Assembly (NCBI GenBank): GCA_965113315.1
Contig: OZ220364.1
DNA from: Podarcis vaucheri
Lineage: Eukaryota
Length of the DNA stretch: 64,000 nucleotides
Direction: 5' to 3' (one strand)
Shown here: one piece after another, positions 1,533 to 38,053 of the stretch
Layout: every line of letters starts with the position of its first letter
Position numbering within the stretch: position 1 is the first letter of the stretch
Made by a program: the position numbers and the translations under genes
Notes under the pieces: generated by a model
Told to the model about the DNA's origin: nothing
What the model saw: only the letters and a program-made list of their open reading frames with translations
Database searches by the model: none

Positions 1533-1544
1533 CTGGAAGTCAAG
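1533..1544 (-). CDS. ERC2: 12-nt microexon of ERC2, phase 2-2, giving ...IAELE-SLTS-R...
   Basis: cccctgcttcaaccag|CTTGACTTCCAG|gtcagt. Joined to the AG ending exon 8073 it reads AGC TTG ACT TCC AGx = SLTSR, matching the optional SLT(S/L)R insert recalled from ERC1/ERC2 proteins. About 125 nt AG-free pyrimidine tract, ACTAAT at 1630-1635. Confidence 0.9.
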
Positions 1545-1635
1545 CTGGTTGAAGCAGGGGTGAAAGCAGCAGTTTGGAGAGTAAACACAAAAAGGAAGGA
1601 AATAGCAAGAGAATAAACGAAGGAAAAACATTAGT
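1545..1635 (-). promoter_or_regulatory. Microexon 3' splice-site region: branch-like ACTAAT, extended polypyrimidine tract, three UGC motifs (1554-1556, 1566-1568, 1569-1571)
   Basis: Motifs read directly from the sequence. UGC near the acceptor plus a long AG-exclusion zone is the established signature of SRRM3/SRRM4-dependent neural microexons. Confidence 0.7.
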
Positions 1636-2895
1636 TTTTCAACATAAAAGTGAGCAGATGTTATATCAGCAATCTCTTGTCAAAAACAGAAATCAACAAA
1701 TAAACGTTAGTGTACAGTGTTTCTAAGATGGGTGATGACCAAAGCAACAGCTTAGGAGGAAGTAAACATGTTGCTTATGTATGATGGAAAAGCTACCTTA
1801 GAATATGTATACATTCTCATGTGTATACACATACAAGTGAAACACTATAAAGCTGATGGCAGTTGCTAAGGCATATGTTTGACAGGAGGCATTCATGCTT
1901 GGGGAAAATAATGTTGCTTGGACCAACAAGGATTTGAGGATGACTCATATACAGCAAGTCATCTTCACCCATGAAAAATAAAGGAAGCTCAATGGCTTGG
2001 CTAGATGTTCAAAGAATTTTGTCAGAGATTCTCAAGTACTGATCACTTACACTGATCAAAGACACCACTTTTTCCCATGGAAACATAGACCTTTCTAAAG
2101 CTGAGAGCAATCTTTTTCAGTCCCAAGAATAAGACCAATACTTCATCACTGAGAATAACCAGATGCATGATAAATATTTTTTTTTACAAAAATATTTAAC
2201 ATGTCCTTTCAATTAGCCAAAACACACATACAAACCCTTATCTAATGCCAAACCAAAAAGAGTCCCCCAGAGCCATCACAGGTGCACATTCCTGCATCAT
2301 TTTGCAAAAGGTGATTTATTTATTTTTTAAACATCAGAAATAGCTGCATAGTGATTTGGTATGCTGGTTTTTTTATTTCAGCGGGTTTTTTTCTCTTGAA
2401 TTTTCTGCGTCCCTCCCACTACCATACTATTGCATTGTTGTTTCAGTATGGTGATATAAAGGAACTGTAAGCTTAAGTATTTTGTCAAAATATGACAGAA
2501 CATTCATCAGGCATTCGCCTTCACAGAGGCACAAGCCTCTCTTAAGTTGGAACAGCCTTACTCAAGGCAACTTGTGAAACATGAACTACAGCACTTGTTT
2601 TTCATTTCCTGTTGGTTGGTTGGTTGATTATTTATTTGGGGCTCTCAGTTTGATGTTATTTAGCACATGTCCAAGTGAAGGTTTACTGTGGAATTTCCCT
2701 GCCTTTGTATACTTTAAGAGAAGAAATTAACTAAAAAGCAGTAAAAGATGGCAGTATCATATGAGAGACTAAGGTTGAACGGATTCATGTCTGTGTTCAG
2801 TACATGTCTACAAAAGTAGACTATAAAGTCTATTCCATCAACTGCCCATCCAGATTTTTAAAAGAAAAAATATTTTAAAACCTGCTTGCTTTTAG

Positions 2896-2897
<2 letters not shown>

Positions 2898-2938
<41 letters not shown>
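2898..2938. repeat. (GA)n microsatellite
   Basis: Direct dinucleotide run. Confidence 0.95.
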
Positions 2939-2941
<3 letters not shown>

Positions 2942-5262
2942 ATGTATTTAAGAGAACTTAAGAAATGATCATTCTTCCTTAAAAAAACAAAACTCCTATT
3001 TCTAGCTTCCCCAAGCAGCTGAAATATGCAGCACTTGTTGTGCTCACTGGACATTGTGACCAAAAACCTGCTGGAAGCAGCAGTATACTGAGATCTTCAT
3101 AGGTAACTCTACAAATAGAAAAGTGGTTCTTCCCCCCCCCCATCCCCAACAACCCATTTAGCAGGGATATTGTATGGGGGAAAATATGGCTCCCCTAAAA
3201 AAAGATTAATTGGAGCAGCCATCTTGTTCTTGATATAGCTATCCAGGGTTTTTCTGGGGCATTGTGGGAAATTTGAAATGAAGGACAGTTCACAGCAGCC
3301 TGTTGCATATCACAGCATTACTGCTGCTTTCCTTCCCTGCTGCTGCTAAGCCTCCTAATGCTGGGCTACAGTAAATTTTAATGAAAGATAATGGCAGAAA
3401 CCAAACATAGGGTACACACAGAGGCAGAGAGAGGCTTAATTCCATTCTTTAATCAAGTAGCTTTCATGGGCCCCACGCCCTTTCAGAATAGTTCCGCAAG
3501 ATGAGGAAGGTGGTGAACTGAGTTTCACAGGGCCCCTCTTCTGAGGTGGATTTAGGGCAGTGACAGAGATGTGGGGGCACTGGCACATAGCTGAGGCAGG
3601 CACCTTCTCAAAGCCCGGTAAGCACCTGCCCAGCTTCAGGAAAGAGGCATGAGGACTCTGACAGGGTCCTAGAGTCCTATTGCCTCCTTCCCCCAGGTTT
3701 TGGGAAGGAGAAGAGGGCTCTAGGACCCCAACAGAGCCCTGTGGCTCCTTCCCAAAGCCCAGCACTTTGTTTACCCTAAGCCTGCACTGGAAGGTGTCAA
3801 ATGTTAGCCTCCCACAGGACAGCATATCCTCAAAGTTTGCCCCTGCCCTGTCTATCTTTCCTTCCCACCATTAGCAAATGAGGTACAGCTAATTGCATCT
3901 ATAAGCTGCAGTTCAACTTCGGCACCAACCTTTACTGGGGTCAGTAATAAGCTGCACCTTCCTTCTACAACTAAAGGAAAATTCAGTCATAGATCTTACA
4001 AGGATTTGCAGCTGTACGTAAAAGAACAGAGGTCATTCACAGTGATTAGCAATTGTGCCCTTATTTCAAATGCTCTAGTTGAGGCATTAAAGAGAAACTG
4101 ATGTTTTCAAAGAAACAAAACAAAAAAAACCCTGGTCCACTCATGGTGTTTTTTTCACCTTTTTCATGTTAAGGCAGAACCAATATGCTATTCATCTCCA
4201 AACTTATGTGTGTAGGCTTTCTGTCTTCATTACATTTTAAGGCCAATAGTAATTCCATCCATCAGTAACTCAAAAACTCAAACCTCTTAGCTGTTTTAAG
4301 TCTGTATGATTGTTGTGGAGTGCTTCAGCTTGGTTTTCAAAGACTTCCATGCATCCCGGATTTAAAGTTAAAAACTATTAAGCATGCCACCATTTTAAAA
4401 CGAAACACATTCATGTATGTGTGAAGAGAATCACATGGGACAATAGGGACCCACAAGCCCTGAACTGAATTGCCCAAGGATAGCTCTCTCATCTTGCTCA
4501 AAAGAATTCATGAAGAAACAGCTTTAGAAAGAGTCTAAAGCAATGTTCGGTTGCCAGGAGCCCAGAGATTAAAATAACTGAAGAAAACACTGAAATGGGT
4601 GGCTAGAGGAGTGGGGAAGAACCATCTCTTGTACATTGCCTGGTCTAAAGGCAGATTGGATGGGGGGAGGAAATTCAACCTGGCAAAGGTTGGGGTGCCT
4701 CAGCTGAGGACGTTTGCATTTTGGCTATCCACTAATTGGTACAAAAGCCAGTATCCAGGCAACTATGCCAAATGAGCCAAGTTGCCTCATCACATAATTT
4801 GCTACAAATGGGGAAAGAGCTTGTATTGAGTCCCTATCCACTCCACTGGAAATATTTTCACATCATTCAGCATGCAAGGCTCCCAGTTCCTGGGTGACAG
4901 TAAAAGCAGCTGAAGGAATGTAGTCCTGTTGAAATTGTTTGAGAAATTGAAGTTAATACGTATCCTCCACAGTGCAGGGAACTGCGTAGCCAGATATCAG
5001 CGCAGAGTCTGGACTGAGCATTGTAACCATTTACTGTCATTGACCAGACATATAAAGTCACTCAGAGATACACCTCATATTGGAAATATGCCACCCATTT
5101 TTATCCTGCTCTGCATACATCTGAGACTCATTCCTCTGAATGAAACTAAAGCACAAGCATGTAAAATATCCACCCATTAGAATTCCTGCCTTTGCTCTCC
5201 AGTCTGTGACAGTAATTTTAAAATGGCTCTGTATTCTAAATGGTTCAAAAAGTTCACATAAA

Positions 5263-5293
<31 letters not shown>
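5263..5293. repeat. (CA)n microsatellite
   Basis: Direct dinucleotide run. Confidence 0.95.
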
Positions 5294-5301
<8 letters not shown>

Positions 5302-6204
5302 TTAGTTCAGGAAATCACATTCCTATGCATGAAGAAAAGCATAAGGTCTTTTCATATATTGTGTCTGTCTGCAATTGATTATATTTTGCAAGTGAATTGC
5401 TTTAAAAGCTAGATGTTCTATTTTGCTAAAAATTCTCCCAGGCTAGAGGATACGAAAAGAAAAACCTGTGCCTTCTTCCACAAAGTGTTGAGTATTTGCC
5501 ACACACACTGATTTAATTAAGAACTATTCCACTAGGTTAATGAAAGGATGTTACAAAATAGCATTTCAGCTACACAAAACAGAAGGCAAGAAAAGTCACC
5601 TTGCGTATTGGAGAGAGATGGGAGTCATGCTATGGCTCCTTTATCCTATTAGCAGCATTTCCACTTTCTAGCAACAATTTTCTAGATATTTCTAGCAGGA
5701 GTCACACAGTAGAAGGATGTGGTTTGCAAATACTTGTTATTTTAAAAAATCCTGCTACAGGACATAACTTTGTGTTCACGAGGAGCTAGAAGTCCTCAAA
5801 GGTGCCCAGGCACAAGATTAACAGGTATCATATTGCTTTGCAGATATCATATTGTAAAGTTGTAGGTTGGAGTCCTAAAACCGTGGAACATATTCTGCTA
5901 GTCAGCACTGCTGAAGGAATGCAAAACAGGAATTTCATAACCTATGATTGACAGGTGGTTATCTCTACACACCAGCTAGGTGAAGTCACATATTGTAACC
6001 TAGAGAATCAGGTTCATAAGACTATAGGTGCACCTGCAGTCTCATAACTCATCCCTCTGACCCTTATGGGAGGGTCTTTAGGACCTTGGGCATGTGACTC
6101 ATGTAGGCAGACAGCAGATGGAACAGAGGAATGAAGCAGACTGTGAAGGGTTTTATTCTAGTTGTGCTTAAGTGCTCAGTTTAAGTGCCTTGTTTAGTCT
6201 AAGT

Positions 6205-6540
6205 CAGTGGTTCCAAAAGTGGGTGGTACCGCCTCCTGGGGGCAGAGGGATTGCCCAGGGGGGGGGCACTGAGAAGCAAGTAAGTGGCAGGGAGGCACTG
6301 AAGGTGTAAATGATTATCAGATTTTGAAAAGCTGGTCTCAATGGATCATCAGTTTTGTTGAATTAATTAAACTAAACAATTTTAACTGGATGTTGAATAA
6401 ATGTGCAATTAATTGTTACTGTTTTGACGTTTATTGTGTTATCTTCTTATTTAGTGGGTTGTGCAAACCACTATTCAGGCATGGGGGGTGAATTTATGGA
6501 ACCAAGGAGGCAGTGGCCCCAAAGAGATTGCGAACCGCTA
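6205..6540. mobile_element. Old non-autonomous hAT DNA transposon
   Basis: Ends CAGTGGTTC.../...GAACCGCTA (degenerate TIR). 8-bp TSD gtctaagt (6197-6204) / gtccaagt (6541-6548). Confidence 0.65.
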
Positions 6541-7566
6541 GTCCAAGTAGGTTCTGTGTACGTTTGTTGCTGCATTTTATGTCTAATATTTGCTGTACAA
6601 GTAATAAAACTTGAAATCTTCACCCACAAGTGTGCTTATTGCCACTTATCTCCTTTTCTTGTGTGCCCACCCCAAATCTACTCCAGAGGGCTGGCAGGAA
6701 ACCCAGTACAGATTTTTTGGGGGGTGCATGGTAGGAGTAGAGGGAGGGGACGTTCTGTTGCTCAAGTGGAAGTCCTTGCATTAATGGGACAACTTGGCTG
6801 GATACAACCCCAGGACTATTAATTATGTACACTATTTAGACAATTTGAAGAATTTTGTTTGTTTCTTTGTAGTACTGCTACCGGGCATGTCATTTGGAGG
6901 GATGCCAAGAGCCCCCCCCAAAAAAAAATCAAGGAGGGGATTGGGCCCCCTCAAAATCCCCCAGTGGCTGTGCACACATGTTGTGGGGCATGCTTGTGTC
7001 ATGTGCACAAGCCACGGGGTGTGACCGTGACATGTCAGCACGCCCCGTGGTGTGCATGTACAGTGTGAGAACGCCACAGCGTGTGCTGATGCCGCATGGC
7101 CCTGGAGCCCTCAATAGCGGAGACAAGGCAGCAGGCTTGACTGCTGCACTGGCCAACTCAGAGATTCAGAAGAGGGTGGTCTATAACATCTAAATAATCA
7201 ATAATGCCGAGTTGCCTTCATCATCATACATGACTGAATCTTTTCCAGTTTTTCCAAATCAGTCTTCATTTGTAGAGTCTCATACCCAAAGTAGACATGC
7301 TGATTTTGTCTTGTTTCATCAAGACTTGAATGCAAGCTTTAAAAAACAAACAAAAAATAGCCCAGAAATAGCATAGCTCACAGATAGCATCATATTGTTG
7401 TCTCACTTGTAACTAAATCTCTTTCAATGAAGCATCATATTGGCGCCTCATTTGTATCTAAATCTCTTCAGCAAAGCACAAATTATTCAGTTAGCCAGTC
7501 TGTTACTTGCTCATTTTGTTCTCTGTGCAAAACTTTACATTTTTGTTAAAAATATTCCTAAAAATG

Positions 7567-7708
7567 CAGTGCTTTTTTTCTAAAAAAATGTTTAGGGGTA
7601 CTCTCATTTTCCTACTCACTGAAATACTGCCCCTCAATGAGGCGAAACTTAGATTCACAAAATGTTTAGGGGTATGCATACCCCTGCATACCCCACCCAA
7701 AAGCACAG
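7567..7708. mobile_element. hAT MITE (CAGTGCTTTT-TIR family), copy 1
   Basis: Near-identical to 20107-20257. 8-bp TSD taaaaatg/tataaatg. Confidence 0.8.
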
Positions 7709-8072
7709 TATAAATGTATTAAGGATCAATTTCTATTTTACTTCCAATATTCTATCACCTAAGTACCAATTTCCACTTCACCCGGTGTATTTTTTGTGTG
7801 TGCAGAGTACTTCATACTATGTATTGTGCAACATTCTTCCTTTCCCTTCCTCCACAACATAGGAGTCCCTTCCCTTTCTTTTAAAGAAATATTGTCTTTC
7901 CAGAAGACACCATGGGCTGCTCCTGACCTTGAAAAATATCAGAACAAAGAATCCATTCACTGTTTGATTGCTTTTTTGTTATTCTTCTGTTAGAAAAATG
8001 TTGCCATTGTTTCTCATCAAAGGTGAGTGTAAAAGGCATTTGTTGAGAAAACACAAATGATGAGGAATTTAC

Positions 8073-8266
8073 CTTTCTAATTCAGCAATTTTCTTATCTT
8101 TGTCATTTTTTTCATTTTCTACTTCCTTGAGGATTTCTAGAAGTCTGTCAACCTCAGCTTGAGCTTTGCCACATTCGTCTCTATAGTAGGCTGCCTCTTT
8201 GTCAAGCTGTTTCATCCTGTCAGCAAATTCAGGGTTCATTCGTGCCTCCTCCTCTGCTTCATGAGC
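8073..8266 (-). CDS. ERC2: ERC2 coding exon, 194 nt, phase 0-2: AHEAEEEARMNPEFADRMKQLDKEAAYYRDECGKAQAEVDRLLEILKEVENEKNDKDKKIAELE(S/R)
   Basis: aatttaacag|GCTCATGAA...TTAGAAAG|gtaaat. 64 codons plus 2 nt. RMNPEFAD...QLDKEA.YYRDECG is the ERC2-type rather than ERC1-type segment as recalled. Confidence 0.96.
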
Positions 8267-9500
8267 CTGTTAAATTTACCAAGAAAACAGAAAGAAATCA
8301 CTACCATTTCAGGTAGCTTCACTTTATTCTGAAGTCCCAGACTTCATACGACGAAAGGATTTATGGGTATCCTGTTAGTTGGCAATGTTTTCTCAATGAT
8401 TCCCATAACAAGGACATGTTTTTGGAGGAAATTCATAGCACCCTGGCTTAGGAAATAAAATGCTAACTTAAGAGAGAGAGAAACACTGCTAGGTTCTGAC
8501 TCTTGTTTCAAAAAACTGTCCTGAACAACTTAATATAAACTAACATATAATATGGTTTAATTTAATAACTGCATTAAACAGTTTATGAACGATTTAATGC
8601 ATACTGTTTTAGGTAAGATGAGAATGCATTTAACAGACAGTTTTACCCAAAATCCTTTCCCCTCTTTTTTTCATTTCATACTGCCAATATTTAACCTGAA
8701 ACATAAGAAGAAACAAGCCCCTTGGTGGAACAGCACAAATAAATATACCTGGCAAACACATGCATGAGTGGGTGGTCAGTTCACAAACAAGAAGGAATGC
8801 AATGAACACAACAGAAAACAAGAGTGCAAAGCCCACTCCTGCTCCCATTAAAGCTAATGGCAAAACCCAATTAACGTCAGTGAGAGCATGAATGGGCCAA
8901 AGTGTTTAAAACATTAGACTGAAATAATCACACACAGATGTAAACAAGAATGCACTGCAATGCTTAGCCTACCCCTTGTTTCCCATTATTCCTAATTGGC
9001 ATCTTCAAAGAGCAGGCAGGGAGAAAACAAGTAGTTTAACCGCAGTGCACATTAAACACACATAATTCAGAGAACACTTTTTAAATGCACACACATACAT
9101 TTTAAAGGATTAAGGACATTTAGAACTGCACGTCCTTCCGCTATCTAACAATATATAACAGATGCTGGGTTTGGGTTCAATCCACACTTAGTCATGCCTA
9201 AAGCAGACTCAATGAAATCAATAGTTAGCACTTAAATCCTGTTGGTTTCAATAGGTCTCTTCTAAGCATGACTAAGGCTGCAATCCTAATCCCACTTACC
9301 TGGGGCTGGGAGTAAGCCCCATTGAATTCAACAGAGCTCACGTCTAAATAGACATGGCCAGGATTGTGCTGTTAGTCTGGAGCCCAAGCCTTCATTTTAA
9401 TTTCCATATTTATATTTACTTCAGGGAATAGATAAGCAAGCAATGAAACAAGTGTTGGTTAAAAGGCAGCATGCAAGTTTAGATAGAAGGTAATACTAAC

Positions 9501-9524
9501 ATAAACTCCTCGAAGTTTGACATC
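9501..9524 (-). CDS. ERC2: Candidate 24-nt microexon of ERC2, phase 0-0: DVKLRGVY
   Basis: atcatTGCaaag|GATGTCAAACTTCGAGGAGTTTAT|gttagt. In frame, no stop, TGCATG 26-31 nt downstream (9470-9475). Splice sites are weak (AAG acceptor, GTTAGT donor, upstream AGs at about -20). Confidence 0.42.
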
Positions 9525-10568
9525 CTTTGCAATGATTTAATCCTCTTTGGTTTTCAACACGTTTAAGTAAAACATTTTTATTATGAAGAAATGTGCAAAA
9601 AAATAGGCTACTGAAGAACTAACGGCTGTTCCCCACCCCCCTGCATGTAACATATCATTTAAGCATGAGGATAATCAAGAAAATAGTTTCGTTTCAGTGG
9701 ATTTCTTATTCTCAAAGAGATGTCTGAGGCCACTTCAAATGTGATGAATTTTCTACATAGACATAATGCATGCAAATCAAGTGTGTTTTAGTTATCCACA
9801 GCAAAAATAAAAAAATAAAAACAAAATCAGTGTGTGATTTCTCATGTCTGATAATGTGCAAGTGGTTTGCAGACTGCCTTTTCTACACAGAAATGTTAAT
9901 AATGTAGGAAAGTCACCATGTTTGAAGCAGCCCTGGGTTTAAACATATGAGGGGAGCATTTTCTACATAAGTAATACATACATTATGCACAAAGGGTACA
10001 GTCTACACATAGCCTCCACTCATTTCAGTGGGAGCTTGAACAAGGTTCCATTTGGTACCTAGAGAATTATGTCCATAATGTTTGATTCAGCTCCCTTTGA
10101 AATAAACAGGAGCTGTTGTACTTTGCAATGTATGTGAATAGACCCGTTAATCTTTACAAGGCTGGGCTCTATATGGAATTCCAAGCACTTCTGAGTGTTC
10201 ATCACAGTCTGCCTGATTTGTCACTCCAAAGAGTAATCCACCATTAAGACGTGGCTTCAAGGGGCATGAGGACAATGATGTGAAAAGGGTCTTGGAACTC
10301 CCAATGGGTTGCAATTCTGTGCACACCCCTTGAATCTGGTACAGAGTCTTGTGTATGCATGAAGGCTTTTGCTATTGGTTATGAGATAAAAAGAGACTTT
10401 CCACCTTTCCCATAGCCAATAGGAGAAATGTCTCACAACAGAAGATTAATAGACCAGCTATGCCAGTTCACAACCAAAACAGAATATATCTACACCACAA
10501 ACTTAAAGCACCAACATAATAATATAACCATCATTGGGCGACTCCTCCATAGGTCTACTCAATAGATT

Positions 10569-10690
10569 CAGGGTGGCCAATGTTGTGCCCTCCAGGTGTT
10601 GTTGGATTACAACTCTCTTCATCCTTGACCATTGGTCATGCAGGCCAGGGCCAAAGAGAATTGTAATCGAACATCTGAAAGTTGCCATCT
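10569..10690. mobile_element. Degenerate copy of the palindromic ~136-bp hAT MITE
   Basis: gccctccaggtgttgttggattacaactc...catccttgaccattgg aligns by eye with copies at 30972, 34008 and 42119. Ends approximate. Confidence 0.55.
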
Positions 10691-13610
10691 ATCCCTACAA
10701 CAGATCATGGTAGGCTCCATGGTAGTTCAAGGCATTCAAGGCATATTCACACACGACGTTATAGTTGAGTTTAAACGGCCATGTCAGGGGCTGTTGAAAG
10801 GCGACTCAGCATCTACAATTCTTGATGGCCCCATCCCAGCTGAATGTAAATGCAGCAAGGCTGAAAATTGCCTGGCATGGAGGCAAGAGAGTGATGGGAG
10901 CACCAGCTCCACCATTGCTGGTATATAAACAGCCAAAGAACAGCAGCAATAGCCTTATTATGGCCAGCATACTGAGGCACACAGTTGGGAGCTTTTGCCA
11001 CAGTGTGGGATGAAAACAAAACAGCTAGCAGAGAAAGCCTCAGCAAGGTGGGAGAGAAGTAATTGGAAAACTGTGAGGTATATGCAACTTCACAGCTCTG
11101 AGGAAAAGGAAGAAAGTAGGAAATGTTTTTTAAGATGTTATTATACTGGAAGGCAAAACCATACAATTTGAAAGGTGGTGATGAGAAGAATCCAGGAATT
11201 CCTGAAGAAAGGACTCACTGGGTCTTCCTCTAAAACTCATTGAGTTAGAACTGGGGCTCTGAAAGACCTGAAGCCACTGTAATTCACTGCCAGCTCTTAA
11301 GGGAAAGAATCTGCAACATGTCACATACTTAACCTGCCATGGTTTTCCTTAAAACAGCCTGGAAACTTTGATTTGGTAAACAGGCTAAAGCTGTTTTCAG
11401 GAAGCTGAAGCACTCTTATTGCACACTTGGAACTGAGATTGTGAGGATTAAGGCTAAATAACTATCCTATTTGTTGGGAAGAATACGTTTTCAGCAGAAA
11501 ACATATATAAATATGTGAGTAGAGTAAGTACTATATGGTGCATTTAAAATGGTAAGTGTAGAAGTTCATATCATAAATTGAAGTAACTTAGCATAATAAA
11601 ATTCAGCTTTTCGATTTTTTAGCCAAGATATAGCCAACTCCTCGTGCCAAAGGAATTAGCAATTATTTTCAACTATGTCAACTCAAGTGTTGTAGGGTGA
11701 CACTGAATGAAGTCTGCGGTGTAAATAGGGCAACATGGGGGCTTTCAATGGATCTAAATGATATCTAGGAGATCGCACGCACGCACAAACACACATACAA
11801 GAAAAAACTTACACTGGTTTGTTCACATTCTCCTTTTGACAGCTAATTCACAACCATTGTTTGAAAAAAAAACAAGACTTTCCTTGTTGCTTTTTATGAT
11901 CACATCAGTCACGGGTCATGTAGGCAGTGTACTTAAAATTACCTGGTTGTCATGGCTGGACCATGGTGCATTTTGGATTTATTGTGGCAATTACTGTGCA
12001 TTGGGAAACCAATGAAATCTGTTCTCAGAGACTTATGGAACCCGGCGGATTCCTGAATGCTCTGGAGAATTTTCCAGTGGAGAGAGCTAGCAATACTGCT
12101 GCGGCCTTGGTAATGCTCTGGAATGGGGAGATGAAGCAGGCCATCAACATGATTGCTCCCAAGTGCCCTCTTTGGTGCTCTGGAGCTCACTTTGCTCACT
12201 GGTAAACCAGGAGCTTATGAGTGATGAAACAGACTGGAAGACGACTAGAAGGCAAGTGGCAGAAATCTTGTGCTGAAGCTGACTGAACACTGGTTAGAGC
12301 ACTGTAACTGTGCCTAATAAGTTGTGAGAGGTGACAACAAAGGCCTACTTTGGTGCCTCCACTACATCCTCTACTAGCTAACGGTGCCTTTTACCAGCTT
12401 GGGTTGATAAGTCAGCTATAGCCATTCCTAGCTCAAGATAGCTTGACATCGGTGGTCCAGGCACTGGTAACCTCAAGACTGGATTAGTGTAATGCACCCT
12501 ATGTGAGGCTTCCCGTGGACTTAACCACCAGTGCATCTTGCAGAAGCTAAATTGTTGACGGGGGTATCCTGTCAACTCCATTTAACACCTCTGCTGAGGG
12601 AGCTGCACTGGCTGCAAATATGCTACTGGGAACAACTGAATATTGTACTTTTAAAGCCCTAAAGAACTTGGGCCCAGGTTATTCAAGGGACTGCCTCGAC
12701 CCAACTGTGCCCCTCAGATGGGTCATCGCTGACAGCACACACTGTATAAGAAATTGGACTTCTAGTTGCAGCTCCAGCCCTCTGAAATAAGTCACCCACA
12801 TTTTTGTTTAAGAAGACTTTTTCAGAGGCGTGACCCGGTCATTTATAGACTATTAATTTTGCACTTGTAGAGGTTGTTTTCCTGTCTTTACAGTTAGTTG
12901 GAGTGGTTTCAATTGTTTTCAGACCTTTTATTGTATCTCATTGTTATATGATATTACATTGGTTCAATGGCTTTAGGCTGTAAAGCAGTTTATAAATTTG
13001 AAAAATAAAATTCAGCAAGGGACAGGAAAATTCACTTCAAATGTGTATTGGAAGCCCATTCACACACAGGTCATAGTGAGGAAACTCCCCCCCCCCAGCC
13101 TCAATTATTTTTTTCTTATGGCTAGGAATGTCTTGTTTAACTGCTTGGAAGCCAGAAGAAAAGACAGGAAGACGAGAACTTTAAGCTCTCCATCTTCTCT
13201 TCAGTTACTCTTCTTCAATCAGCAAGCCATGCCAGATCGCCTTCAGCCAGATTAACCAGTTCCTTGAATAATGCTATTATGTGGATTAAAACACAATGCA
13301 CATCATATTTTTAAAGGTATGTAAAAAAAAAGACTGTTCAGCAATTATTTACAGGCACAAGACGGTCTAAACATTTTTCCAACTAATTCCCAAGCACCTT
13401 CATTGTTCCACAAAGTATTCACTGAATGAATTTAACAGCGTACAGTAATCCAAATCTATAATGACACAACTGAGAAATTGAATGATTATATCACTGAACG
13501 GTGTGATCCATAAACGGTTGTGTGGGTTAAATGTATCTCTTTTTCACTGCTGCCAACATCAGTCTTGGTAGCCAAGCCCATCGGTCAGTGGTCAGTGGAA
13601 TGGCTGCAAC

Positions 13611-13746
13611 CAGTGCTATTTTTCTACAAAAATATGTGCCGGAACTCACCCTGAATGCCACCCTTGTTCTCTTACAATGGCATTGGCACCCACCTGAGAG
13701 GTGCTGGGACTGAGTTCCAGTGAGTTCTGGCTGAAAAAAAGCCCTG
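13611..13746. mobile_element. hAT MITE
   Basis: CAGTGCTATTTTTC...GAAAAAAAGCCCTG imperfect TIR. 8-bp TSD gctgcaac/gttgcaac. Confidence 0.75.
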
Positions 13747-15164
13747 GTTGCAACTGCTGTGGCCAGTCGAAGCAGCCTTGGGAGAAAGATGCATGGTTGT
13801 GTCGGGGTCAAGCTCTGTCAGTCTTCAGTTGTCCATGCTACAACCAGTGAGTTGAAGCTTTAGTACAGTACAGTCAGTGTGGAATCATGACCTAAGCTAC
13901 TAGAAAAGGAGACCCATACATAATTTTAAACAATTGCTATTAAATATATCATTTGCATCTTTCCAGATATTTATAGAAAGCGGGTGTAAGAATACAACCA
14001 TGTTGGATCACAGAATTTTAAAAAATGATTATAGAACATATGGCTTGAATTGCTTAGTATGCCCATGTCTTGGAATATGAATTGTCACAAATTTTATTAT
14101 TTTATTTTATTATTTTACAATGAATACTCAAAACAGAATGTCATGCTTCACTGATCACTGGTTTATAAGAGGAGATGGGGCCATACGGAGGAATCAAAGA
14201 GGTCAGTCCTTATTAATGAACTGGCCTTCAAGTCTCTGCATTAATTAAACATCTAATAACACTACAATTTTACTTTAAAAAATGATTATTAACATACTTT
14301 CCTATTTTAGAGCAGTGGCTCTCCAAGTGATACAACCTCTAGTCTAAGCCCCATTTTGTATTTGGGTGTCTTGAACCCTAATTTGCTTGCATTGCACAGG
14401 GAGTAGCAGAGTTATGTCTCCATATCATACAAACTTACTATATACACCAATATTACATAATTGTGCCAAATACAAAGAAATTGAAAACATGTGCTTTATT
14501 AATTAGCATGCGATGGGCACTGTTTAGTCTTCTGCCAATGGTACATATACATAAGACCAGTACATCTTAACTTAAAAGAGTCAAAAGAGCCATATAATGA
14601 TGAATAAATAGAATGAGACAGCAGAAAGATACATGCAATAAAATACTTTAGTTAGATCCTTCAAACTATTGATAAATAATATAGAATTCAAGAGAATGTT
14701 AACGTTCAGTTCATTATTAGTTAATACCTCGGCTTGAGTGAAGGAAGTAATTTTAAACTTGCCTCCTTTGTATTTGCAGTGTTGAACTTAGAAGCTGCAT
14801 GTTTCTTGTCATTAGTTCTCAATTTCCACAGAACAGCTGGAAAAACATAATCTATCAAATGGATAGCAATGTTTTAATGTAGAACAAAAATAGTTCCTGC
14901 AAGGTACTAATTGCCTCAGGGCAAATTCAGGAACTCTAGAAGATATTGTCTCAAACGCTATCATCTACAAACCAGTAAAGATGGAAGCTATGGCCAAAAT
15001 AGCTCTAAACCGGGAGATAGTGGAATGTCTGTTCATTTTGTCCATATTAGTTAGCTATAGATATGCACCAAGTAATATCATACATGGACGGAAGTCAGCA
15101 CCAAGGCTCCACTGGCTTCAATTAAATCAAAGGTTTACCTATTTATGGTAAGGCTGCTTGTCAA

Positions 15165-15660
15165 TTATTATTGTTGTTGTTGCTGTTGTTGTTATTATTA
15201 TTATTATTATTTCTACACCACCTTTCATCTGAGGATCACAGGGTGGTTTACAATATAAAAACACAAAAATACATAACAGAATGACAAACAGAAACAATAA
15301 CCCCCCCACACAGTTTAAAAGACTATAGATTGATTAATGAGCCAAAGGCCTGGGGAAAAAGGAATGATTTTACCTGGCACCTAAATATATGTAATGAAAG
15401 CGCCAGGTAACAGTGGCGTAGCGTGGGGGGTGCAGGGGGGGCCGGGCGCACCGGGCGCAACATCTGGGGGTTAGGGGGCGCAAATCCACGGGTTAGGGGG
15501 CGCAAATTACTTGCCTTGCCCCGGGTGCTGACAACCCACGCTACGCCACTGCCAGGTAAGCCCCTCCAGGGAGAGCATTCAAAAAGTGGGGAGCCACTAC
15601 AAAAAAGGCCCATTCTTGTGTTGCTGCCCTACAGACCTCTTGACGAAGAGGCACCCAAAG
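15165..15660 (-). mobile_element. L2-type LINE 3' fragment with (AAT/AAC)n tail, interrupted by a MITE
   Basis: Reverse complement of the 3' fragments at 36980 and 57595, and collinear with 27949. Boundaries approximate. Confidence 0.65.
15411..15551. mobile_element. Young GC-rich 141-bp hAT MITE
   Basis: Perfect 17-bp TIR CAGTGGCGTAGCGTGGG / CCCACGCTACGCCACTG. Perfect 8-bp TSD ccaggtaa (15403-15410, 15552-15559). Confidence 0.92.
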
Positions 15661-15859
15661 ATGGTTGCCTCCCCCAACGTTGTGTACAATGAGGATTTCA
15701 AGTGTGAAATGCTTTAGCCACCCACCCAGAGAAAACAAAGGAAGTCCTGCTTTTTTTTTGCCAAAACCAGTTTTGGGATGCTGACAACTGGAGAAGCTCA
15801 TGGCGCTCTTAAAAAAAGCAAGGACTGCTCCACCCCTACAGAGATGGCAGATATAACAT

Positions 15860-16090
15860 ATTATTGATTATTTATTGCATTTACATCCCACCTTATTTTC
15901 CACAGAGCTCCAGGTGGTGTGGTTCTGCTGCTCCTCATTTAATACCCGCAACAGCCCTGTGAGGTTGGCGGGGACACTGTGACTGGCCCAAGGTCACCCA
16001 GTGTGTTTCATGGCTGAGTAAGGGATTAGACCCCTAATCTCCCAGGTCCTAGTCTGACACTCTAACCACTACACCACACCACACCGGCTC
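15860..16090 (-). mobile_element. Old tRNA-derived MIR/CORE-like SINE
   Basis: Reverse complement resembles 20421-20630 (tggtgtagtggttagagtgt...ggactaggacctgggaga head). Ends approximate. Confidence 0.6.
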
Positions 16091-18039
16091 TCAGACCTGT
16101 TTGGCCCCTATGCACCAAAGTTTTAAGGCTGTTGTTTGGCATGCTGGAACACAGAGAAGCAGTAGAATCAGTCAGCCAACCTCTCTGCTGTGCTTTCTTC
16201 CAAAACAAGAGGGAAAAAATCATCTTCTGTACACAATCCCTATTAGTAGTTGTAACCCCTTTCCACTCAAGCCTACGTCATGCATTGCTCGTGTGGAGAG
16301 GGTGTGTTGAATTGCACATTTATCCCTACTCAGAAAGTCATGCTGCTGCTCCTGCCTTTACTATTACTATTACTATTACTATTACTATGTTCAGGGTAAC
16401 ACCCGCAGTGGGGCACCTTAGCTACGCATGGAGGCTCCCTGTGCAATTTGGAAACCTTGTTAAACAGGGTTGTAAATTGCAGGGGGGTTTCATGCATGGA
16501 GGATTTCTGCTGTAAACATAATCCTGAACACAATGACAATAAAAGTGGGTCAGGGGGAGCAGGACAACTTTGTGGGTGGAGCTAAATAGGCAACCCTAAG
16601 CCCCCATTCAACACACTTTTCCTCTACACAAGAACAACACAGGAGGAAGGCTTCCATTGCCTGCAATCTGGGAAGCATATATTTTAACCCAATCCTGACA
16701 TGTGGGAGATGTGTGAGGCAAGAGAGAGGCCAGAAGCTCATCATCTTGCCCAGTGACTGTGCTGGGCACTACCCTTCACAGTCTCAGCATAAAAACTATC
16801 TTTCCCGCTCTACTTATCACAGATAAACCACATTTAACACAAATGTGTGTGGGTTGTTTTTTTCAAAAATCAAATTCATGGTAAAGGAAAAGTCCCAGAA
16901 TATAAAAGAAGTGTAGAATAGAGAAGAAGAAAAAAGGATTATATCATGGTCCTTTCCAACTCTGCAATTCTGTGATCCTAATCCTGCTGTAGCAGTGATC
17001 TGCAAAAATGGTTTTATAAAAAAATTATATGCTTCCCTTCCTTCCCAAATGTTCCAAAGAGCTACTTGAGAAATTAGTGCTAAATGAAGTTTTAAGTTAA
17101 GTCAGAATTTCAATATTTAGCCATTTTGTCCATTAAACTGGCACTTGTTTCAGTTTAAAAAGCTACAATATTCAGTAAATGCTCTTACTAGGGTGGGCAC
17201 CTTCTACTCTTCTTTCTATTGCAGATACATTCATTTCTTGGTATACTGTGGTAAACTAACCAGAACAATAGACATATTTTGCCTTGAGGCAGGACATTGG
17301 ATTTGGTCACTTTTTTGCCCTGCCAATTAAAATAAAAAATAAAAGTGAGAAATACAATTGTTTGTGGGAGTCTGGGTGTAAATTAGTTGAATTTATGGTC
17401 AATTTTAACTTTTAATTTTCATTATGAAGGGGGGAATCAATAACAGTATAAGTAATGCAGCAAAGGGAGAGGAAAAGATCATTACACAATAGGCTCACAA
17501 TGCTGACCACAATGCTGAACCAAAAAAAAACCCCACATTGAATTCAATGTTCTTTCTTGCCACAGCAGCTGCCAATGTCAAGTTTACAATTTGGGTTTTA
17601 TTGTTGAAAGAATTTAAACGGCAGTTTGAGGCCTACCATTTGGCAATGCCACAATAAAATTCTGGATGTTCTATATGCTCCCCTAGATGAAAAACTACGC
17701 TACAGAGTCATATTAAATCAAAATACTTTTATTTAAATCAGTATCCTTTTTGGCTTGAACAGGCTAAAAGCCAGCTTCTACAGCTTAACTGGGTTATAGG
17801 ACAGAGATCTAAGGGGGAGGAAGAGTTAGGGACAATTCAAAGAATGCAGGATGCATATGCACTGGGTTGTGAGAGTAAGCCTGGTTTTAATGCACCCTCT
17901 CCCATTCTGTGCAGAACCTTTGATATAAATCCATCACTAGAACCTACTCAGGTAATCCCTCCAGCACAAGAAAGCTTCTCAAGTAGACATTTATGCATAT
18001 AGACAGGAAAGGTTCATCGTGATGGGGAGAGGGTGCACA

Positions 18040-18160
18040 CCTGTGACTCTTAATCCCATAGTCGTAGGTTCAAGCCCCACGTTGGGCAAAAGATTTCTGC
18101 ACTGCAGGGGCTTGCACAAGATGGCCCTTGTGGTCTCTTCCAACGCTATGATTCTATGAA
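18040..18160 (+). mobile_element. Short tRNA-headed SINE with CR1-like 3' tail
   Basis: B-box-like ggttcaagccc followed by ...tcttccaacgctatgattctatga, the ATTCTRTG-type CR1 tail. Confidence 0.5.
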
Positions 18161-20106
18161 AGCTCCTGAATATGAAGTAAGAAATTGGAAATCATCTCAC
18201 GTGGAATAAAGTGGGTGTTAAGAGTACTCATGAATCGGATTAATATCAGGCAATTTATATCCTGCTGCTCAGGACTGACCTGCTGGAAGCCTGAGGGGCC
18301 CTGCCCTGCTTCTCTCCACCTGGCTTGGTGGACTGCTGCCGCCGCTGCTGGACGGAGAGGGCTCCGTTTTTGTTTTGTTTAAAAATTGCTTTTATTTTTT
18401 ACCTATGTCATTTAAAATTGTGATTGCTATTAATGCTGTATTCTTAGTTTTGGATTTTATGATTTATGCGGAAATTGTTTTCCATTTGGTTGTGTACTTT
18501 TTGATGTGTTTTATTTATTGTTTATGACTTTTGTTATGTTGGTAATTATGTAAATTTTGTCATGTTGTAAGCCAGCTTGAGCATTGTTTTAACTATGGAA
18601 AGGCGGCATACAAATAAAATGATGAATGAATGAGTGAATGTTCAGCAGCGACACAAATATGTAAGTTGACAATGGTCCAGCTGTCACATTGCCGTAAACC
18701 ATACTTAACCAGTTACCACGAACTTGCCAATCTGAGCCCCATTGCTTCTCCCTGTTGGTGTATGGAGGGGGGTGGGAAATCAAAATTCTTGACTTTGCAT
18801 TATTAGGGCTGAGTTTGTTTGTTTGTTTGCTCAGATAAACCAAAACCAGTAAGCCAAGAACAAATCTTGGCCAGAGATCATGCTTTCTTTGGGGCAAAAT
18901 GAACAATGGTTCCTTTGTTCACATTCATAGCAAACCATTAACTAGGCGAGGAATGGTGGGATATAAATTCATCAGAATCATAGAGTTGAAAGGGAACCCA
19001 AGGGCCATCTAATCGAACCGGCTGCAATGCAGGAATCAATGCTAAGGGCATTTGCCCCCGCTCCTTCCCCTCAGGAAAATCTGCAGTTTAGTGCTAAATC
19101 AGAACAAAGAGCAATCTGGTTTTCTGCTCAATGCTTTTTGTTCTGATTTAGGGTTTCAAGGGGAAATTGAAGGAGCAAAGTCAAAACTGCTTAGAATCAT
19201 GATCAGAAAGCATAGGACATGCAGAAAACCACTTGGTAGGCATGGGATAAGTGTGGATGAACCCCAAAACATCCCTGGCAGGTGGCCATAAACAATAACA
19301 AATAATTAACACTGGTTTACTATAATGCATGAGTAGGGCCAATGTGATGTGGGATGGGGAATTTCATCCTGTAAGAGCAACTGCACCCATTTCCCATCTA
19401 CTAAAATCATCTTGCTGCAGATTTTATTTTAATTTTAATTTTGGGGGGGCAAAATACATGATGTTTTGTTGGTAACTTATCTAAAAGTATACATATGGCA
19501 AAGTAGGAATAAATTTAGACCTTATATGAGAACATAAGATCTACCTAAAACTAAATGTAATTACAGGCTAATTTTGGATAAATAAATGTGGTGTGTTTTA
19601 TGAGGCCTATTATTTCCTCACCAGGACATTAAATTTTCATTACAACTGTGGAATTTGCTCAAATACAATGAAGAGGAATAATGCCCTAGCTGCACATAAC
19701 AGAAATTTTCCTTAGAGATATGCCACACCTTCCACCTGCAATTACAAAACACTATGTAATTTAAAAACAGGTTTCTATAATACAGCTTTAACATTCTTTC
19801 TGCCTTTTAAAAGGTACAATAATTTTCATTATCAGTGTAAATCTGTCACTAAGATATAAAAATGCTTTCATTTCTAGACGATATATCTATGTAATACATT
19901 TATATATAACCGTCTATGTGTCTTGCTGTTCCTCAAATTACTTATAATGACTATCAAGTTATTCACTCAGATTCATTTGAGTTGAGTGTTGTTTCTGGCA
20001 TTGCACATCTGTTAAAGCAAGTTCTAGCACACAACATAATAAGATGTGTTTGTTTGTAAGGTGCCATTGGACATTTTATTCTTTACATTGTTGGAATACA
20101 TGGAAC

Positions 20107-20257
20107 CAGTGCTTTTTTCCCTAAAAAAAAATGTTTAGGGGTACTCTCATTTTCCTACTCATATTGAAATACTGCCCCTCAATGAGGCCAAACTTAGATT
20201 CACAAAATGTTTAGGAGTATGTGTACCCCTGCATACCCCCAGGGGGGAAAAGCACTG
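20107..20257. mobile_element. hAT MITE (CAGTGCTTTT-TIR family), copy 2
   Basis: TIR CAGTGCTTTT/AAAAGCACTG. Perfect 8-bp TSD catggaac (20099-20106, 20258-20265). Confidence 0.88.
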
Positions 20258-20420
20258 CATGGAACTAAAACTGAATTGTGGTATTTAAACTTAAGCAGCA
20301 AGAGTATATTTTCCTGTTTTAAAAAGGCACACTGTGGTAAGTGGCATCTGGGTACACTTCTATGGGAGAAAGTCCCATTGATATCAGAAGCTCTCTCTTT
20401 CTAGCAAGTATGTTTGTGAA

Positions 20421-20632
20421 AGCCATTGTGGTGTAATGATTAGAGTGTTGGACTAGGACCTGGGAGACCAAAGTTCAAATCCCCACTCAGCCATGAAGTT
20501 TGTTGGATGATCTTAGGGCAGTCTCTTAGCCTAACCTACCTCACAGGCCTGTTGTGATGATAAACTTGGTGAGGGGGAAACCGTGTACATGAGCTCCTTG
20601 GAGTGGTTTATAAAACGTAATTAATAAATAAA
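20421..20632 (+). mobile_element. Old tRNA-derived MIR/CORE-like SINE
   Basis: A-box-like tggtgtaatgattagag, B-box-like agttcaaatccc, core cctacctcacagg..tgttgtga, (AAAT)n tail. Confidence 0.65.
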
Positions 20633-21159
20633 ATTCAAGTGTTCGTGACAACATTTTAAAAGGCTGCTATAAGGAACATTTAATGTTGTGACGTAGCAAT
20701 TCCCTGTCTGCTGCCAGAAACCTACCACACTACATTTTTTATAACGCAAAGAAAATAGACAGTAACTATTTATTCTTCATTTAAGATATTCTGAATAACA
20801 TTCCAGAGCTTAAGTTTAATTTGAAGGATCCACTGAAGTACTCCATGAGTATAGCAGTAAAATAACAACAAAGCCTGATATCTGCATGCTTTCTTACACT
20901 GAAGTAGTTGAGGACCTGAAGGCACTTCAAATTTGATCGCAAAACTTACTGATCCAATTTCTAATAAACACAATTTCCCACAAACGTTTGAAAATATAAT
21001 AGCCTTAAAGTCCGCAAAGCTCACTTTATTTCAACACAACGCAAATGAAGCCATCATTGTTTTGCAAAGCTCCACAGAGGAAGAAGGACAACATGGTGGT
21101 GGTTAAATGGATCCTCATGCTTTCGTATGTTACAGCGGACACTTTCTGAAATGACTTAC

Positions 21160-21195
21160 TGGATTGTACATCTGATTGAACAACTGTTCAGCTTG
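21160..21195 (-). CDS. ERC2: Candidate alternative 36-nt cassette exon of ERC2, phase 0-0: QAEQLFNQMYNP
   Basis: CTAAT branch-like motif (21263-21267), about 70 nt AG-free pyrimidine-rich tract, ttTGCaatgtag|CAAGCTGAACAGTTGTTCAATCAGATGTACAATCCA|gtaagt. Length is a multiple of 3, no stop, phase matches the host intron. Confidence 0.72.
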
Positions 21196-25997: not shown

Positions 25998-26138
25998 CTT
26001 TTTCAGTTGTGCTTCTAGCTTACTACACTCCTCCTTCTTTTGCTCTATGGCTATTTCTAAAGACTTTAACTTGGAGTCTCTTTTCAGTCCAGCCGAAGCC
26101 AATGATGATGCATGTTCTTTGAGGTCAATTAAGCTAGA
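25998..26138 (-). CDS. ERC2: ERC2 coding exon, 141 nt, phase 0-0: SSLIDLKEHASSLASAGLKRDSKLKSLEIAIEQKKEECSKLEAQLKK
   Basis: tatttag|TCTAGCTTA...AAAAAG|gtaaat. 47 codons, open. Confidence 0.96.
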
Positions 26139-27732: not shown

Positions 27733-27873
27733 CTCTTTTTCTGTTAACTCTGCTTGCAAAGCATTAACTTTTTCCTTCAGGTCTTTGTTTTCTTTTTTAA
27801 AGGATTCAATTTCTTCAATCCTTTCACGGTCATCTCTTTCCCTCTGCTCCTTTAATCGCTCTATAATTCTCTC
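27733..27873 (-). CDS. ERC2: ERC2 coding exon, 141 nt, phase 0-0: ERIIERLKEQRERDDRERIEEIESFKKENKDLKEKVNALQAELTEKE
   Basis: tatttag|GAGAGAATT...AAAGAG|gtcagt. 47 codons, open, in frame with neighbouring exons. Confidence 0.96.
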
Positions 27874-32997: not shown

Positions 32998-33135
32998 CTT
33001 CTCTGATAGAGCTTCTTCCAATGTTGCTAGAGCTGTGTCTGTGTTACTGGAATCAGTCTGCAACGACTTCACTCTGTCTTTCAAATTGGTTAGCTGTTTG
33101 TCTTTATCCCTAAGTTGCTCCTGAAGATTTTCAAT
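32998..33135 (-). CDS. ERC2: ERC2 coding exon, 138 nt, phase 0-0: IENLQEQLRDKDKQLTNLKDRVKSLQTDSSNTDTALATLEEALSEK
   Basis: ttttaaag|ATTGAAAAT...GAGAAG|gtatgg. Hand translation continues the frame of the previous exon. Not in the ORF track. Confidence 0.96.
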
Positions 33136-37920: not shown

Positions 37921-38053
37921 NNNNNNNNNNNNNNNNNNNNNNNNNNNNNNNNNNNNNNNNNNNNNNNNNNNNNNNNNNNNNNNNNNNNNNNNNNNNNNNN
38001 NNNNNNNNNNNNNNNNNNNNNNNNNNNNNNNNNNNNNNNNNNNNNNNNNNNNN
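37921..38053. other. Assembly gap (133 N)
   Basis: Run of N. Confidence 1.

What the first reader, a model, noticed from the sequence alone, without database searches (positions are those of the whole stretch)
1533..21195. A 4/8/12-residue microexon set around one ERC2 coiled-coil exon, possibly co-regulated
Seen: three short frame-preserving exon-like units flank the 194-nt exon. The 36-nt (21160-21195) and 24-nt (9501-9524) units lie in the upstream phase-0 intron and the 12-nt unit (1533-1544) in the downstream phase-2 intron. Each matches its intron phase and has TGC within -5 to -12 of the acceptor. Established: acceptor-proximal UGC marks SRRM3/SRRM4-dependent neural microexons, ELKS/CAST is a coiled-coil active-zone scaffold, and a 4-residue insertion is a heptad 'stutter'. 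Inference: up to 8 isoform combinations could insert 12, 8 and 4 residues, none a multiple of 7. The inserts carry Pro or Gly and Tyr/Ser/Thr and could change register, flexibility or phosphorylation. From memory this is near the start of the Bassoon/Piccolo-binding part of CAST, which needs verifying.
Basis: partly seen in the sequence, partly recalled or inferred. Interest (0 to 1): 0.8.

Follow-up and report, generated by a model that had tools for sequence, protein, structure and literature searches.

The report
Known ERC2 mini-exons, one miscalled

Summary
The window holds eight minus-strand exons of ERC2/CAST. Their translations are identical to Lacerta agilis ERC2, so the genome is probably a squamate's.

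- **36-nt unit (21195-21160, QAEQLFNQMYNP): real.** It sits at the same junction in 120 tetrapod and many teleost ERC2 proteins. It is letter-for-letter the mouse Erc2 exon 12, whose inclusion falls from 45.8% to 0% in Srrm4-mutant vestibular macula (Nakano 2012).
- **12-nt unit (1544-1533, SLTS): real.** It is listed as a known ERC2 microexon in human and mouse brain. Its ERC1 paralogue is an RT-PCR-validated SRRM4-dependent microexon.
- **24-nt unit (9524-9501): not supported.** Its acceptor has a purine-rich tract. It ranks 243 of 685 frame-preserving candidates in its intron, and none of 430 fetched proteins carries it.
- **Missed exon: 30 nt at 9002-8973 (MPIRNNGKQG).** It has UGC upstream and is present in 58 bird and lizard proteins.

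So the inserts are 12, 10 and 4 residues. The 22-residue pair lies at the CCC/CCD boundary, about 87 residues after the Bassoon-binding domain, not at its start.

Verdict: already known, low interest.

The parts
58674..58841 (-). ERC2 constitutive exon, 168 nt (VDALRLRL...VLQKK)
   Evidence: Local tblastn of bird and lizard ERC2 proteins. Splice sites read.
32998..33135 (-). ERC2 constitutive exon, 138 nt (IENLQEQ...ALSEK)
   Evidence: tblastn, 100% identity. Acceptor ag at 33137-33136.
27733..27873 (-). ERC2 constitutive exon, 141 nt (ERIIERL...LTEKE)
   Evidence: tblastn. ag/gt confirmed.
25998..26138 (-). ERC2 constitutive exon, 141 nt, phase 0 to 0 (SSLIDLKEH...EAQLKK). It is the upstream partner of the alternative exons. 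TGCATG lies 31 nt into the following intron.
21160..21195 (-). 36-nt alternative exon, QAEQLFNQMYNP. Orthologue of mouse Erc2 exon 12.
   Evidence: Translation. The same 12 residues sit at the same junction in 120 tetrapod ERC2 proteins, and QAEQLFSQMNNP in teleosts. All 36 letters match the mouse Srrm4-regulated exon in Nakano 2012, supplementary file 4. The human 36-nt ERC2 exon is listed as 'known', used in 14 of 35 circRNA reads.
21203..21205 (-). UGC at -10..-8 of the 36-nt exon's acceptor
   Evidence: The same ...CTTTGCAATGTAG stands before the mouse exon (compared by eye).
21116..21120 (-). GCAUG 40 nt downstream of the 36-nt exon, a possible RBFOX site
   Evidence: The same AAGCATGAGGATCC string is in the mouse downstream flank (compared by eye).
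8973..9002 (-). TGC at -12..-10 and -16..-14.
   Evidence: Listed as candidate rank 5 of 685 and read. The exact peptide follows QAEQLFNQMYNP in 58 bird and lizard ERC2 proteins; mammals have KSIRNNGKQG or KPIRNNGKQG.
8073..8266 (-). 194-nt constitutive exon, phase 0 to 2 (AHEAEEEARMNPEF...KKIAELE). It starts the CCD region.
   Evidence: Pfam PF10174 is on record for the hits.
1533..1544 (-). 12-nt microexon. Together with the AG carried over from the 194-nt exon it reads S-L-T-S.
   Evidence: Rank 1 of 294 candidates. ...AELE-SLTS-RHMKDQNKK in 59 of the 120 tetrapod proteins (58 bird/lizard, 1 echidna); SLTL or SLTF in the other mammals that carry it, SLAP or SLTS in fish. Forms with and without it both exist. 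The 12-nt ERC2 exon is listed as known in human and mouse brain.
1554..1556 (-). UGC at -12..-10 of the 12-nt microexon's acceptor; two more at -27 and -24
9501..9524 (-). Most likely a chance AG...GT pair, not an exon.
   Evidence: Acceptor score -8.5, pyrimidine fraction 0.36, donor gttagt. Rank 243 of 685 overall and about 30 of 59 among TGC-bearing candidates. Absent from all 430 fetched proteins. All 120 tetrapod isoforms have only two segment lengths, 289 or 285 residues, across the window's exons.

Best explanation
The window carries eight minus-strand exons of ERC2 (CAST/ELKS2) from a squamate-like genome. Around the 194-nt exon lie three genuine, deeply conserved, already annotated alternative mini-exons:
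- 36 nt (21195-21160)
- 30 nt (9002-8973)
- 12 nt (1544-1533)

The 24-nt unit at 9524-9501 is background.

Likely mechanism, inferred from orthologues and paralogues: in neurons and sensory hair cells, SRRM4 or SRRM3 recognises the UGC that sits within about 16 nt of each weak acceptor. It recruits early spliceosome factors, and the mini-exons are included. Elsewhere they are skipped.

Effect on the protein:
- The 36- and 30-nt exons together add 22 residues (QAEQLFNQMYNP + MPIRNNGKQG) exactly at the boundary between coiled-coil regions CCC and CCD. The first nine or so residues prolong the CCC helix. The Pro/Gly/Asn-rich remainder lengthens a flexible hinge. That hinge lies between the liprin/Bassoon-binding half and the half that binds Rab6, the CaV-beta subunit and RIM.
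- The 12-nt exon adds four residues (SLTS) at the end of the first CCD helix.

Shown here: the exons, their conservation, and the UGC motifs. Taken from papers: Srrm4 dependence of the mouse 36-nt exon and of the ERC1 12-nt exon. Inferred: regulation in this species, and the structural consequence.
For: - **Exact peptides in other species.** All three inserts occur at the same junctions in 58 bird and lizard ERC2 proteins. Near-identical ones occur in mammals, and the 36- and 12-nt ones in teleosts.
- **Identity of the gene.** The window's exons are 100% identical to Lacerta agilis ERC2 X1.
- **Published Srrm4 dependence.** The mouse Erc2 Srrm4-regulated exon has the same 36 letters and very similar flanks. 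Its inclusion is 45.8% in bv/+ and 0% in bv/bv vestibular macula.
- **ERC1 paralogue.** The ERC1 microexon, whose junction primers read ELE-SLTS-RQVKDQN, was one of four RT-PCR-validated SRRM4-dependent microexons.
- **Human and mouse brain.** The 36-nt and 12-nt ERC2 exons are listed as known exons there.
- **UGC motifs.** UGC lies at -10..-8 (36 nt), at -12..-10 and -16..-14 (30 nt), and at -12..-10 (12 nt).
- **Ranking.** The three real exons are the top-scoring TGC-bearing, frame-preserving candidates in their introns.
- **Structure model.** In the AlphaFold2 model of Lacerta ERC2, a helix runs from residue 536 to 718. A low-confidence loop covers 719-742, that is the end of the 36-nt exon, the whole 30-nt exon and the residues AHEAEEEARMN. 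A second helix runs from 743 to 798 and ends in SLT.
- **Domain boundary.** ELKS2 CCC ends ...NIE656 and CCD starts DDS657, inside AHNIEDDS.
Against:
- Every sauropsid protein I saw carries all three inserts. My search was biased towards such forms, so alternative use in sauropsids, as opposed to constitutive use, is not shown.
- No source I could read reports SRRM4 dependence of the 30-nt or the 12-nt ERC2 exon.
- The structure model is a monomer with pTM 0.25 and pLDDT below 50 at both sites. The hinge reading is weak.
Confidence: 0.85

Rival explanations
1. One reading: the 24-nt unit 9524-9501 is a real microexon, perhaps lineage-specific, used alongside the others.
For: It has AG and GT, an open frame in phase 0, TGC at -7..-5, and TGCATG 26 nt downstream at 9475-9470.
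Against: - The tract before the acceptor is purine-rich: pyrimidine fraction 0.36, acceptor score -8.5. The donor gttagt is weak.
- It ranks 243 of 685 overall and about 30 of 59 among TGC-bearing candidates.
- GCATG occurs 1.2 times per kb in this window, so a nearby copy is not rare.
- No fetched protein carries DVKLRGVY. None of the 120 tetrapod isoforms has an extra 8 residues in this segment.
Confidence: 0.04
2. In sauropsids the 36-, 30- and 12-nt exons are simply constitutive parts of ERC2, always included wherever the gene is expressed, so there is no isoform switch in this species.
For: All 58 bird and lizard proteins fetched carry all three inserts. Single-model annotations such as 'ERC protein 2 [Gallus gallus]' include them.
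Against: - The search ranked proteins by match to a query that had all three inserts, so skipped forms would fall below the 120 listed.
- Mammals and teleosts have annotated forms with and without the 12-nt exon, and teleosts with and without the 36-nt exon.
- The mouse 36-nt exon is only 45.8% included, and only with Srrm4.
- ERC2 is almost neuron-specific (own knowledge). 'Constitutive where expressed' and 'neural-specific' are therefore hard to tell apart.
Confidence: 0.15
3. The three exons are regulated independently by different factors, for example RBFOX, PTBP or NOVA, rather than as one SRRM3/4 module.
For: - GCATG lies 40 nt downstream of the 36-nt exon and is also in the mouse flank.
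- TGCATG lies 31 nt downstream of the 141-nt exon.
- Annotated teleost isoforms show all four combinations of the 36- and 12-nt exons.
Against: - All three carry UGC close to the acceptor.
- Srrm4 loss abolishes the mouse 36-nt exon.
- SRRM4 drives the paralogous ERC1 12-nt exon.
- Combinations in gene models are partly the annotation pipeline's own choice.
Confidence: 0.2

Closest known systems
Mouse Erc2 (CAST1) exon 12, an Srrm4-regulated exon (Nakano et al. 2012, PLoS Genet, PMC3464207)
   Same: All 36 letters are identical. It sits at the same junction between the ...QLKK exon and the AH... exon. The acceptor string CTTTGCAATGTAG is the same, as are GTAAGTCATTTC and AAGCATGAGGATCC downstream (compared by eye).
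   Different: Another species. Srrm4 dependence (45.8% to 0%) was measured in mouse vestibular macula, not here.
ERC1 12-nt SRRM4-dependent microexon (Insplico, NAR 2023, PMC10250204; used as a helix-preserving example in NSMB 2026, PMC13759335)
   Same: Same place, directly after ...AELE. Same length, same phase-2 context, same peptide SLTS.
   Different: It is in the paralogous gene. For ERC2 itself I found the 12-nt exon listed only as a known brain microexon, not tested against SRRM4.
RefSeq and UniProt ERC2 models of birds and lizards (e.g. Gallus gallus E1C853, 979 aa; Lacerta agilis isoform X1)
   Same: They read ...QLKK-QAEQLFNQMYNP-MPIRNNGKQG-AHEAEEEA...AELE-SLTS-RHM. These are the exact translations of the window's 36-, 30- and 12-nt exons.
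   Different: Nothing of substance. The window is one more genome with the same exons.
The vertebrate neural microexon programme driven by the eMIC domain of SRRM3/SRRM4 (Irimia 2014 and Torres-Mendez 2019, from own knowledge; features restated)
   Same: Short frame-preserving exons, weak acceptors, UGC just upstream of the acceptor, deep conservation, and a synaptic scaffold gene.
   Different: 36 and 30 nt exceed the strict limit of 27 nt, though they fall inside the 51-nt limit used. Neural specificity and SRRM dependence were not measured here.

Membership tests
ERC2 / CAST / ELKS2 gene (ELKS family, Pfam PF10174) | Exon translations match ERC2 proteins and carry the family domain | tested here: met
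   The window's exons are 100% identical to Lacerta agilis ERC2 X1 and 92-100% to chicken ERC2. PF10174 is on record for all hits.
ERC2 / CAST / ELKS2 gene (ELKS family, Pfam PF10174) | It is ERC2 rather than the paralogue ERC1 | tested here: met
   The 194-nt exon reads AHEAEEEARMNPEFAD..YYRDECGK, like proteins named ERC2. ERC1-type hits read AHEA(T/A)LEARASPE(M/L)SD.
SRRM3/4 (eMIC)-dependent neural microexons | Length of at most 51 nt (strictly 3-27 nt) and frame-preserving | tested here: met
   36, 30 and 12 nt, all multiples of 3 and open in the intron's phase. Only the 12-nt exon meets the strict 27-nt limit.
SRRM3/4 (eMIC)-dependent neural microexons | UGC within about 20 nt upstream of the acceptor | tested here: met
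   -10..-8 for the 36-nt exon; -12..-10 and -16..-14 for the 30-nt exon; -12..-10 for the 12-nt exon. The 24-nt unit also has one at -7..-5, but TGC occurs 18.7 times per kb here.
SRRM3/4 (eMIC)-dependent neural microexons | Inclusion restricted to neural or sensory tissue | not testable with these tools
SRRM3/4 (eMIC)-dependent neural microexons | Inclusion lost without SRRM4 or gained with it | not tested
   Literature on relatives only: the mouse orthologue of the 36-nt exon goes from 45.8% to 0%, and the ERC1 paralogue of the 12-nt exon is SRRM4-dependent. Nothing found for the 30-nt exon.
SRRM3/4 (eMIC)-dependent neural microexons | Conservation across vertebrates | tested here: met
   At protein level, the 36- and 12-nt exons run from teleosts to mammals. 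The 30-nt exon is in mammals including a monotreme, in birds and in lizards, and was not seen in the teleosts sampled.
Coiled-coil 'stutter' (four residues inserted into a continuous heptad repeat) | The insert lies inside an uninterrupted coiled-coil helix | tested here: inconclusive
   In the AlphaFold2 monomer model, SLTS (796-799) sits at the end of helix 743-798. Residues 797-827 have pLDDT below 50. No coiled-coil register program was available. The 22-residue insert is clearly not a stutter, because it lies in a helix break.
Bassoon/Piccolo-binding region of CAST | The site falls within or at the start of the mapped binding domain | tested here: not met
   The minimal domain is aa 441-600. 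The inserts enter after residue 687 of 979-residue forms, five residues before the CCC/CCD boundary.

The most novel reading that the evidence does not exclude
The 36-, 30- and 12-nt exons might form one SRRM3/4-controlled module, included together on the same transcripts in ribbon-synapse and other specialised neurons. The module would lengthen the CCC-CCD hinge by 22 residues and shift the first CCD helix by four. That could change how the liprin/Bassoon-binding half of CAST is placed relative to the half that binds Rab6, the CaV-beta subunit and RIM. A field review states that the function of the internal ELKS exons is not known, so this has not been tested. Much less likely (about 4%), the 24-nt unit is a squamate-specific fourth member.
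Probability: 0.3. Interest if true: 0.45.

Novelty: already known. Interest (0 to 1): 0.15.

Why it matters
For genome annotation, this shows that a sequence-only reader found two of three real ERC2 mini-exons but swapped the third for a chance look-alike 500 bases away. Ranking candidates by splice-site strength together with UGC would have picked the right three.

For biology, little is new. The exons are in public gene models, and the 36-nt exon has been a published Srrm4 target since 2012. What these inserts do to CAST at the active zone is still unstudied (Held and Kaeser 2018). Their position at the CCC/CCD hinge gives a concrete hypothesis to test.

Tried and rejected
- **Word search with the 64-residue exon.** It returned only unspliced genomic ORF fragments, which say nothing about junctions.
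- **Joining exons into a spliced model.** I did not do this. Exons were searched singly by reference. Full-length database proteins found through them served as queries.
- **RNA reads.** Local scripts and the Rfam scans left them out.
- **The look-up of encoding contigs.** I asked for the chicken 979-residue protein, which is on record on 40 Logan contigs. So I had no cDNA contigs and no orthologous intron DNA, and could not test conservation of the 24-nt region.
- **Mouse flanks from Nakano's table.** I compared them by eye only and did not type them into a tool.
- **Supplements of Quesnel-Vallieres 2015.** Not held.
- **Wang et al. 2002 (PMC137906).** Not held.
- Nothing found.
- **A passing idea of three equal 141-nt exons.** Dropped: the exons measure 168, 138, 141 and 141 nt.


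Full report
**What is in the window**

The minus strand carries eight exons of ERC2 (CAST/ELKS2).

| Exon (window coordinates) | Length | Kind |
|---|---|---|
| 58841-58674 | 168 nt | constitutive |
| 33135-32998 | 138 nt | constitutive |
| 27873-27733 | 141 nt | constitutive |
| 26138-25998 | 141 nt | constitutive |
| 21195-21160 | 36 nt | alternative |
| 9002-8973 | 30 nt | alternative |
| 8266-8073 | 194 nt | constitutive |
| 1544-1533 | 12 nt | alternative |

I mapped them with a local tblastn of bird and lizard ERC2 proteins and read the splice sites directly. The translations are identical to Lacerta agilis ERC2 isoform X1, so the genome is probably a squamate's. The 194-nt exon is of the ERC2 type (RMNPEFAD), not the ERC1 type (ASPEMSD).

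**Checking the observation**

To ask whether they exceed chance, I listed every stop-free, frame-preserving AG...GT unit of 3-51 nt in the two introns. I ranked them with a simple splice-site score.

- The 12-nt unit is first of 294.
- The 36-nt unit is tenth of 685.
- The 24-nt unit is 243rd of 685. Its acceptor is preceded by a purine-rich tract (pyrimidine fraction 0.36).

Among the 59 candidates in the 17.7-kb intron that also have TGC at -12..-5, the best two are a 30-nt unit at 9002-8973 and the 36-nt unit. The 24-nt unit is about thirtieth.

**Evidence from relatives**

A single 64-residue exon finds only unspliced genomic fragments in the word search. I therefore ran the exhaustive profile search with that exon. 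It returned full-length ERC proteins.

A carp ERC2 already showed ...QLQK-QAEQLFSQMNNP-KAHE... and ...AELE-SLAP-RQ.... I then used that carp protein, and afterwards a baboon isoform, as queries restricted to the junction region. This gave 430 proteins in all.

Across the 120 tetrapod proteins the junction reads as follows:

- QAEQLFNQMYNP, followed by MPIRNNGKQG in birds and lizards, or by KSIRNNGKQG or KPIRNNGKQG in mammals.
- Then the 194-nt exon.
- Then SLTS, SLTL or SLTF, or nothing, before RHMKDQNKK.

The sauropsid strings are the exact translations of window 21195-21160, 9002-8973 and 1544-1533.

Teleosts have the 12-residue and 4-residue inserts in all four combinations. None of those sampled has the 10-residue insert.

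No protein contains DVKLRGVY. The segment spanning the window's exons has only two lengths among the 120 tetrapod isoforms: 289 residues, or 285 without the 4-residue insert. This absence is suggestive, not decisive. The list was cut at 120 and ranked by similarity to a query without that insert.

**Literature**

- Nakano et al. 2012 list a mouse Erc2 exon among Srrm4-regulated exons. Its 36 letters equal the window's, and its flanks are very similar by eye, including CTTTGCAATGTAG before it and AAGCATGAGGATCC after it.
- Inclusion of that exon is 45.8% in bv/+ vestibular macula and 0% in bv/bv.
- Rahimi et al. 2021 list the human 36-nt ERC2 exon (used in 14 of 35 circRNA reads) and the human and mouse 12-nt ERC2 exons as known.
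- The paralogous ERC1 12-nt microexon has junction primers reading ELE-SLTS-RQVKDQN. It is one of four RT-PCR-validated SRRM4-dependent microexons in Insplico.
- The same ERC1 microexon is used as an example of a helix-preserving microexon in a 2026 paper.
- A review of ELKS proteins says that numerous internal exons may be alternatively spliced and that their functional relevance is not known.

**Place in the protein**

Held et al. 2016 end ELKS2 region CCC at ...NIE656 and start CCD at DDS657. That is five residues into the 194-nt exon. The 36- and 30-nt exons therefore insert 22 residues right at the CCC/CCD boundary.

The minimal Bassoon-binding domain of CAST is aa 441-600. In 979-residue forms the insert follows residue 687. 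That I take to be the 957-residue CAST plus 22; the length of CAST is from my own knowledge.

I modelled Lacerta ERC2 with AlphaFold2, using 30 aligned sequences (mean pLDDT 65, pTM 0.25).

- One helix runs from residue 536 to 718, ending within QAEQLFNQM.
- A low-confidence non-helical stretch covers 719-742: YNP, the whole 30-nt exon, and the constitutive residues AHEAEEEARMN.
- A second helix runs from 743 to 798 and ends in SLT.
- Another low-confidence stretch follows.

I read the 22 residues as lengthening an existing hinge rather than shifting a heptad register. The 'stutter' idea for the 4 residues is neither supported nor refuted. A monomer model of a dimeric coiled coil is weak evidence either way.

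**What could not be done**

That removed both the chicken cDNA contigs and any orthologous intron DNA.
- The mouse flanks from the paper were compared by eye and not typed into a tool.

As a result, tissue specificity, co-inclusion and SRRM dependence in this species remain inferred. The 24-nt unit is rejected on splice-site weakness and absence from proteins, not on reads or alignments.

**Verdict**

The third is most likely chance, and a real 30-nt exon was overlooked. The set of 36, 30 and 12 nt is already annotated in many species. Its 36-nt member is a published Srrm4 target, and the paralogue of its 12-nt member is a validated SRRM4 microexon. This is a known feature, and interest is low. 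The open question is what the 22- and 4-residue inserts do to CAST.

Noticed in passing
window 25962-25967 (minus strand): TGCATG, the RBFOX consensus, lies 31 nt into the intron after the 141-nt exon, upstream of the alternative exons. It may help regulate them or may be chance: GCATG occurs 1.2 times per kb in the window.
   Followed up: no
window 9470-9475 (minus strand): TGCATG lies 26 nt downstream of the rejected 24-nt unit and about 470 nt upstream of the real 30-nt exon. If it works at all, it could be a distal element for the 30-nt exon rather than evidence for the 24-nt unit.
   Followed up: no
window 37921-38053 and 62492-62639: Two runs of N, 133 and 148 bases, inside ERC2 introns.
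   Followed up: no
proteins P0208 and P0224 (Papio anubis ERC2 isoforms X8 and X2): These models repeat the start of the 194-nt exon (...SQHLQ-AHNIEDDSRMNPEFADRIKQLDKE...) a second time further down. This looks like an assembly duplication or an annotation artefact in that genome.
   Followed up: no
teleost ERC2 proteins (e.g. P0108 against P0225): Many teleost isoforms have one extra lysine between the 12-residue insert and AHE (NNP-K-AHE against NNP-AHD). It also occurs without the insert (K-AHEVEV). Likely a tandem NAGNAG acceptor or a 3-nt exon. The 10-residue insert was not seen in any teleost sampled.
   Followed up: partly
They have no UGC and no counterpart in any fetched protein. They show how easily such units arise in long introns.
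   Followed up: partly
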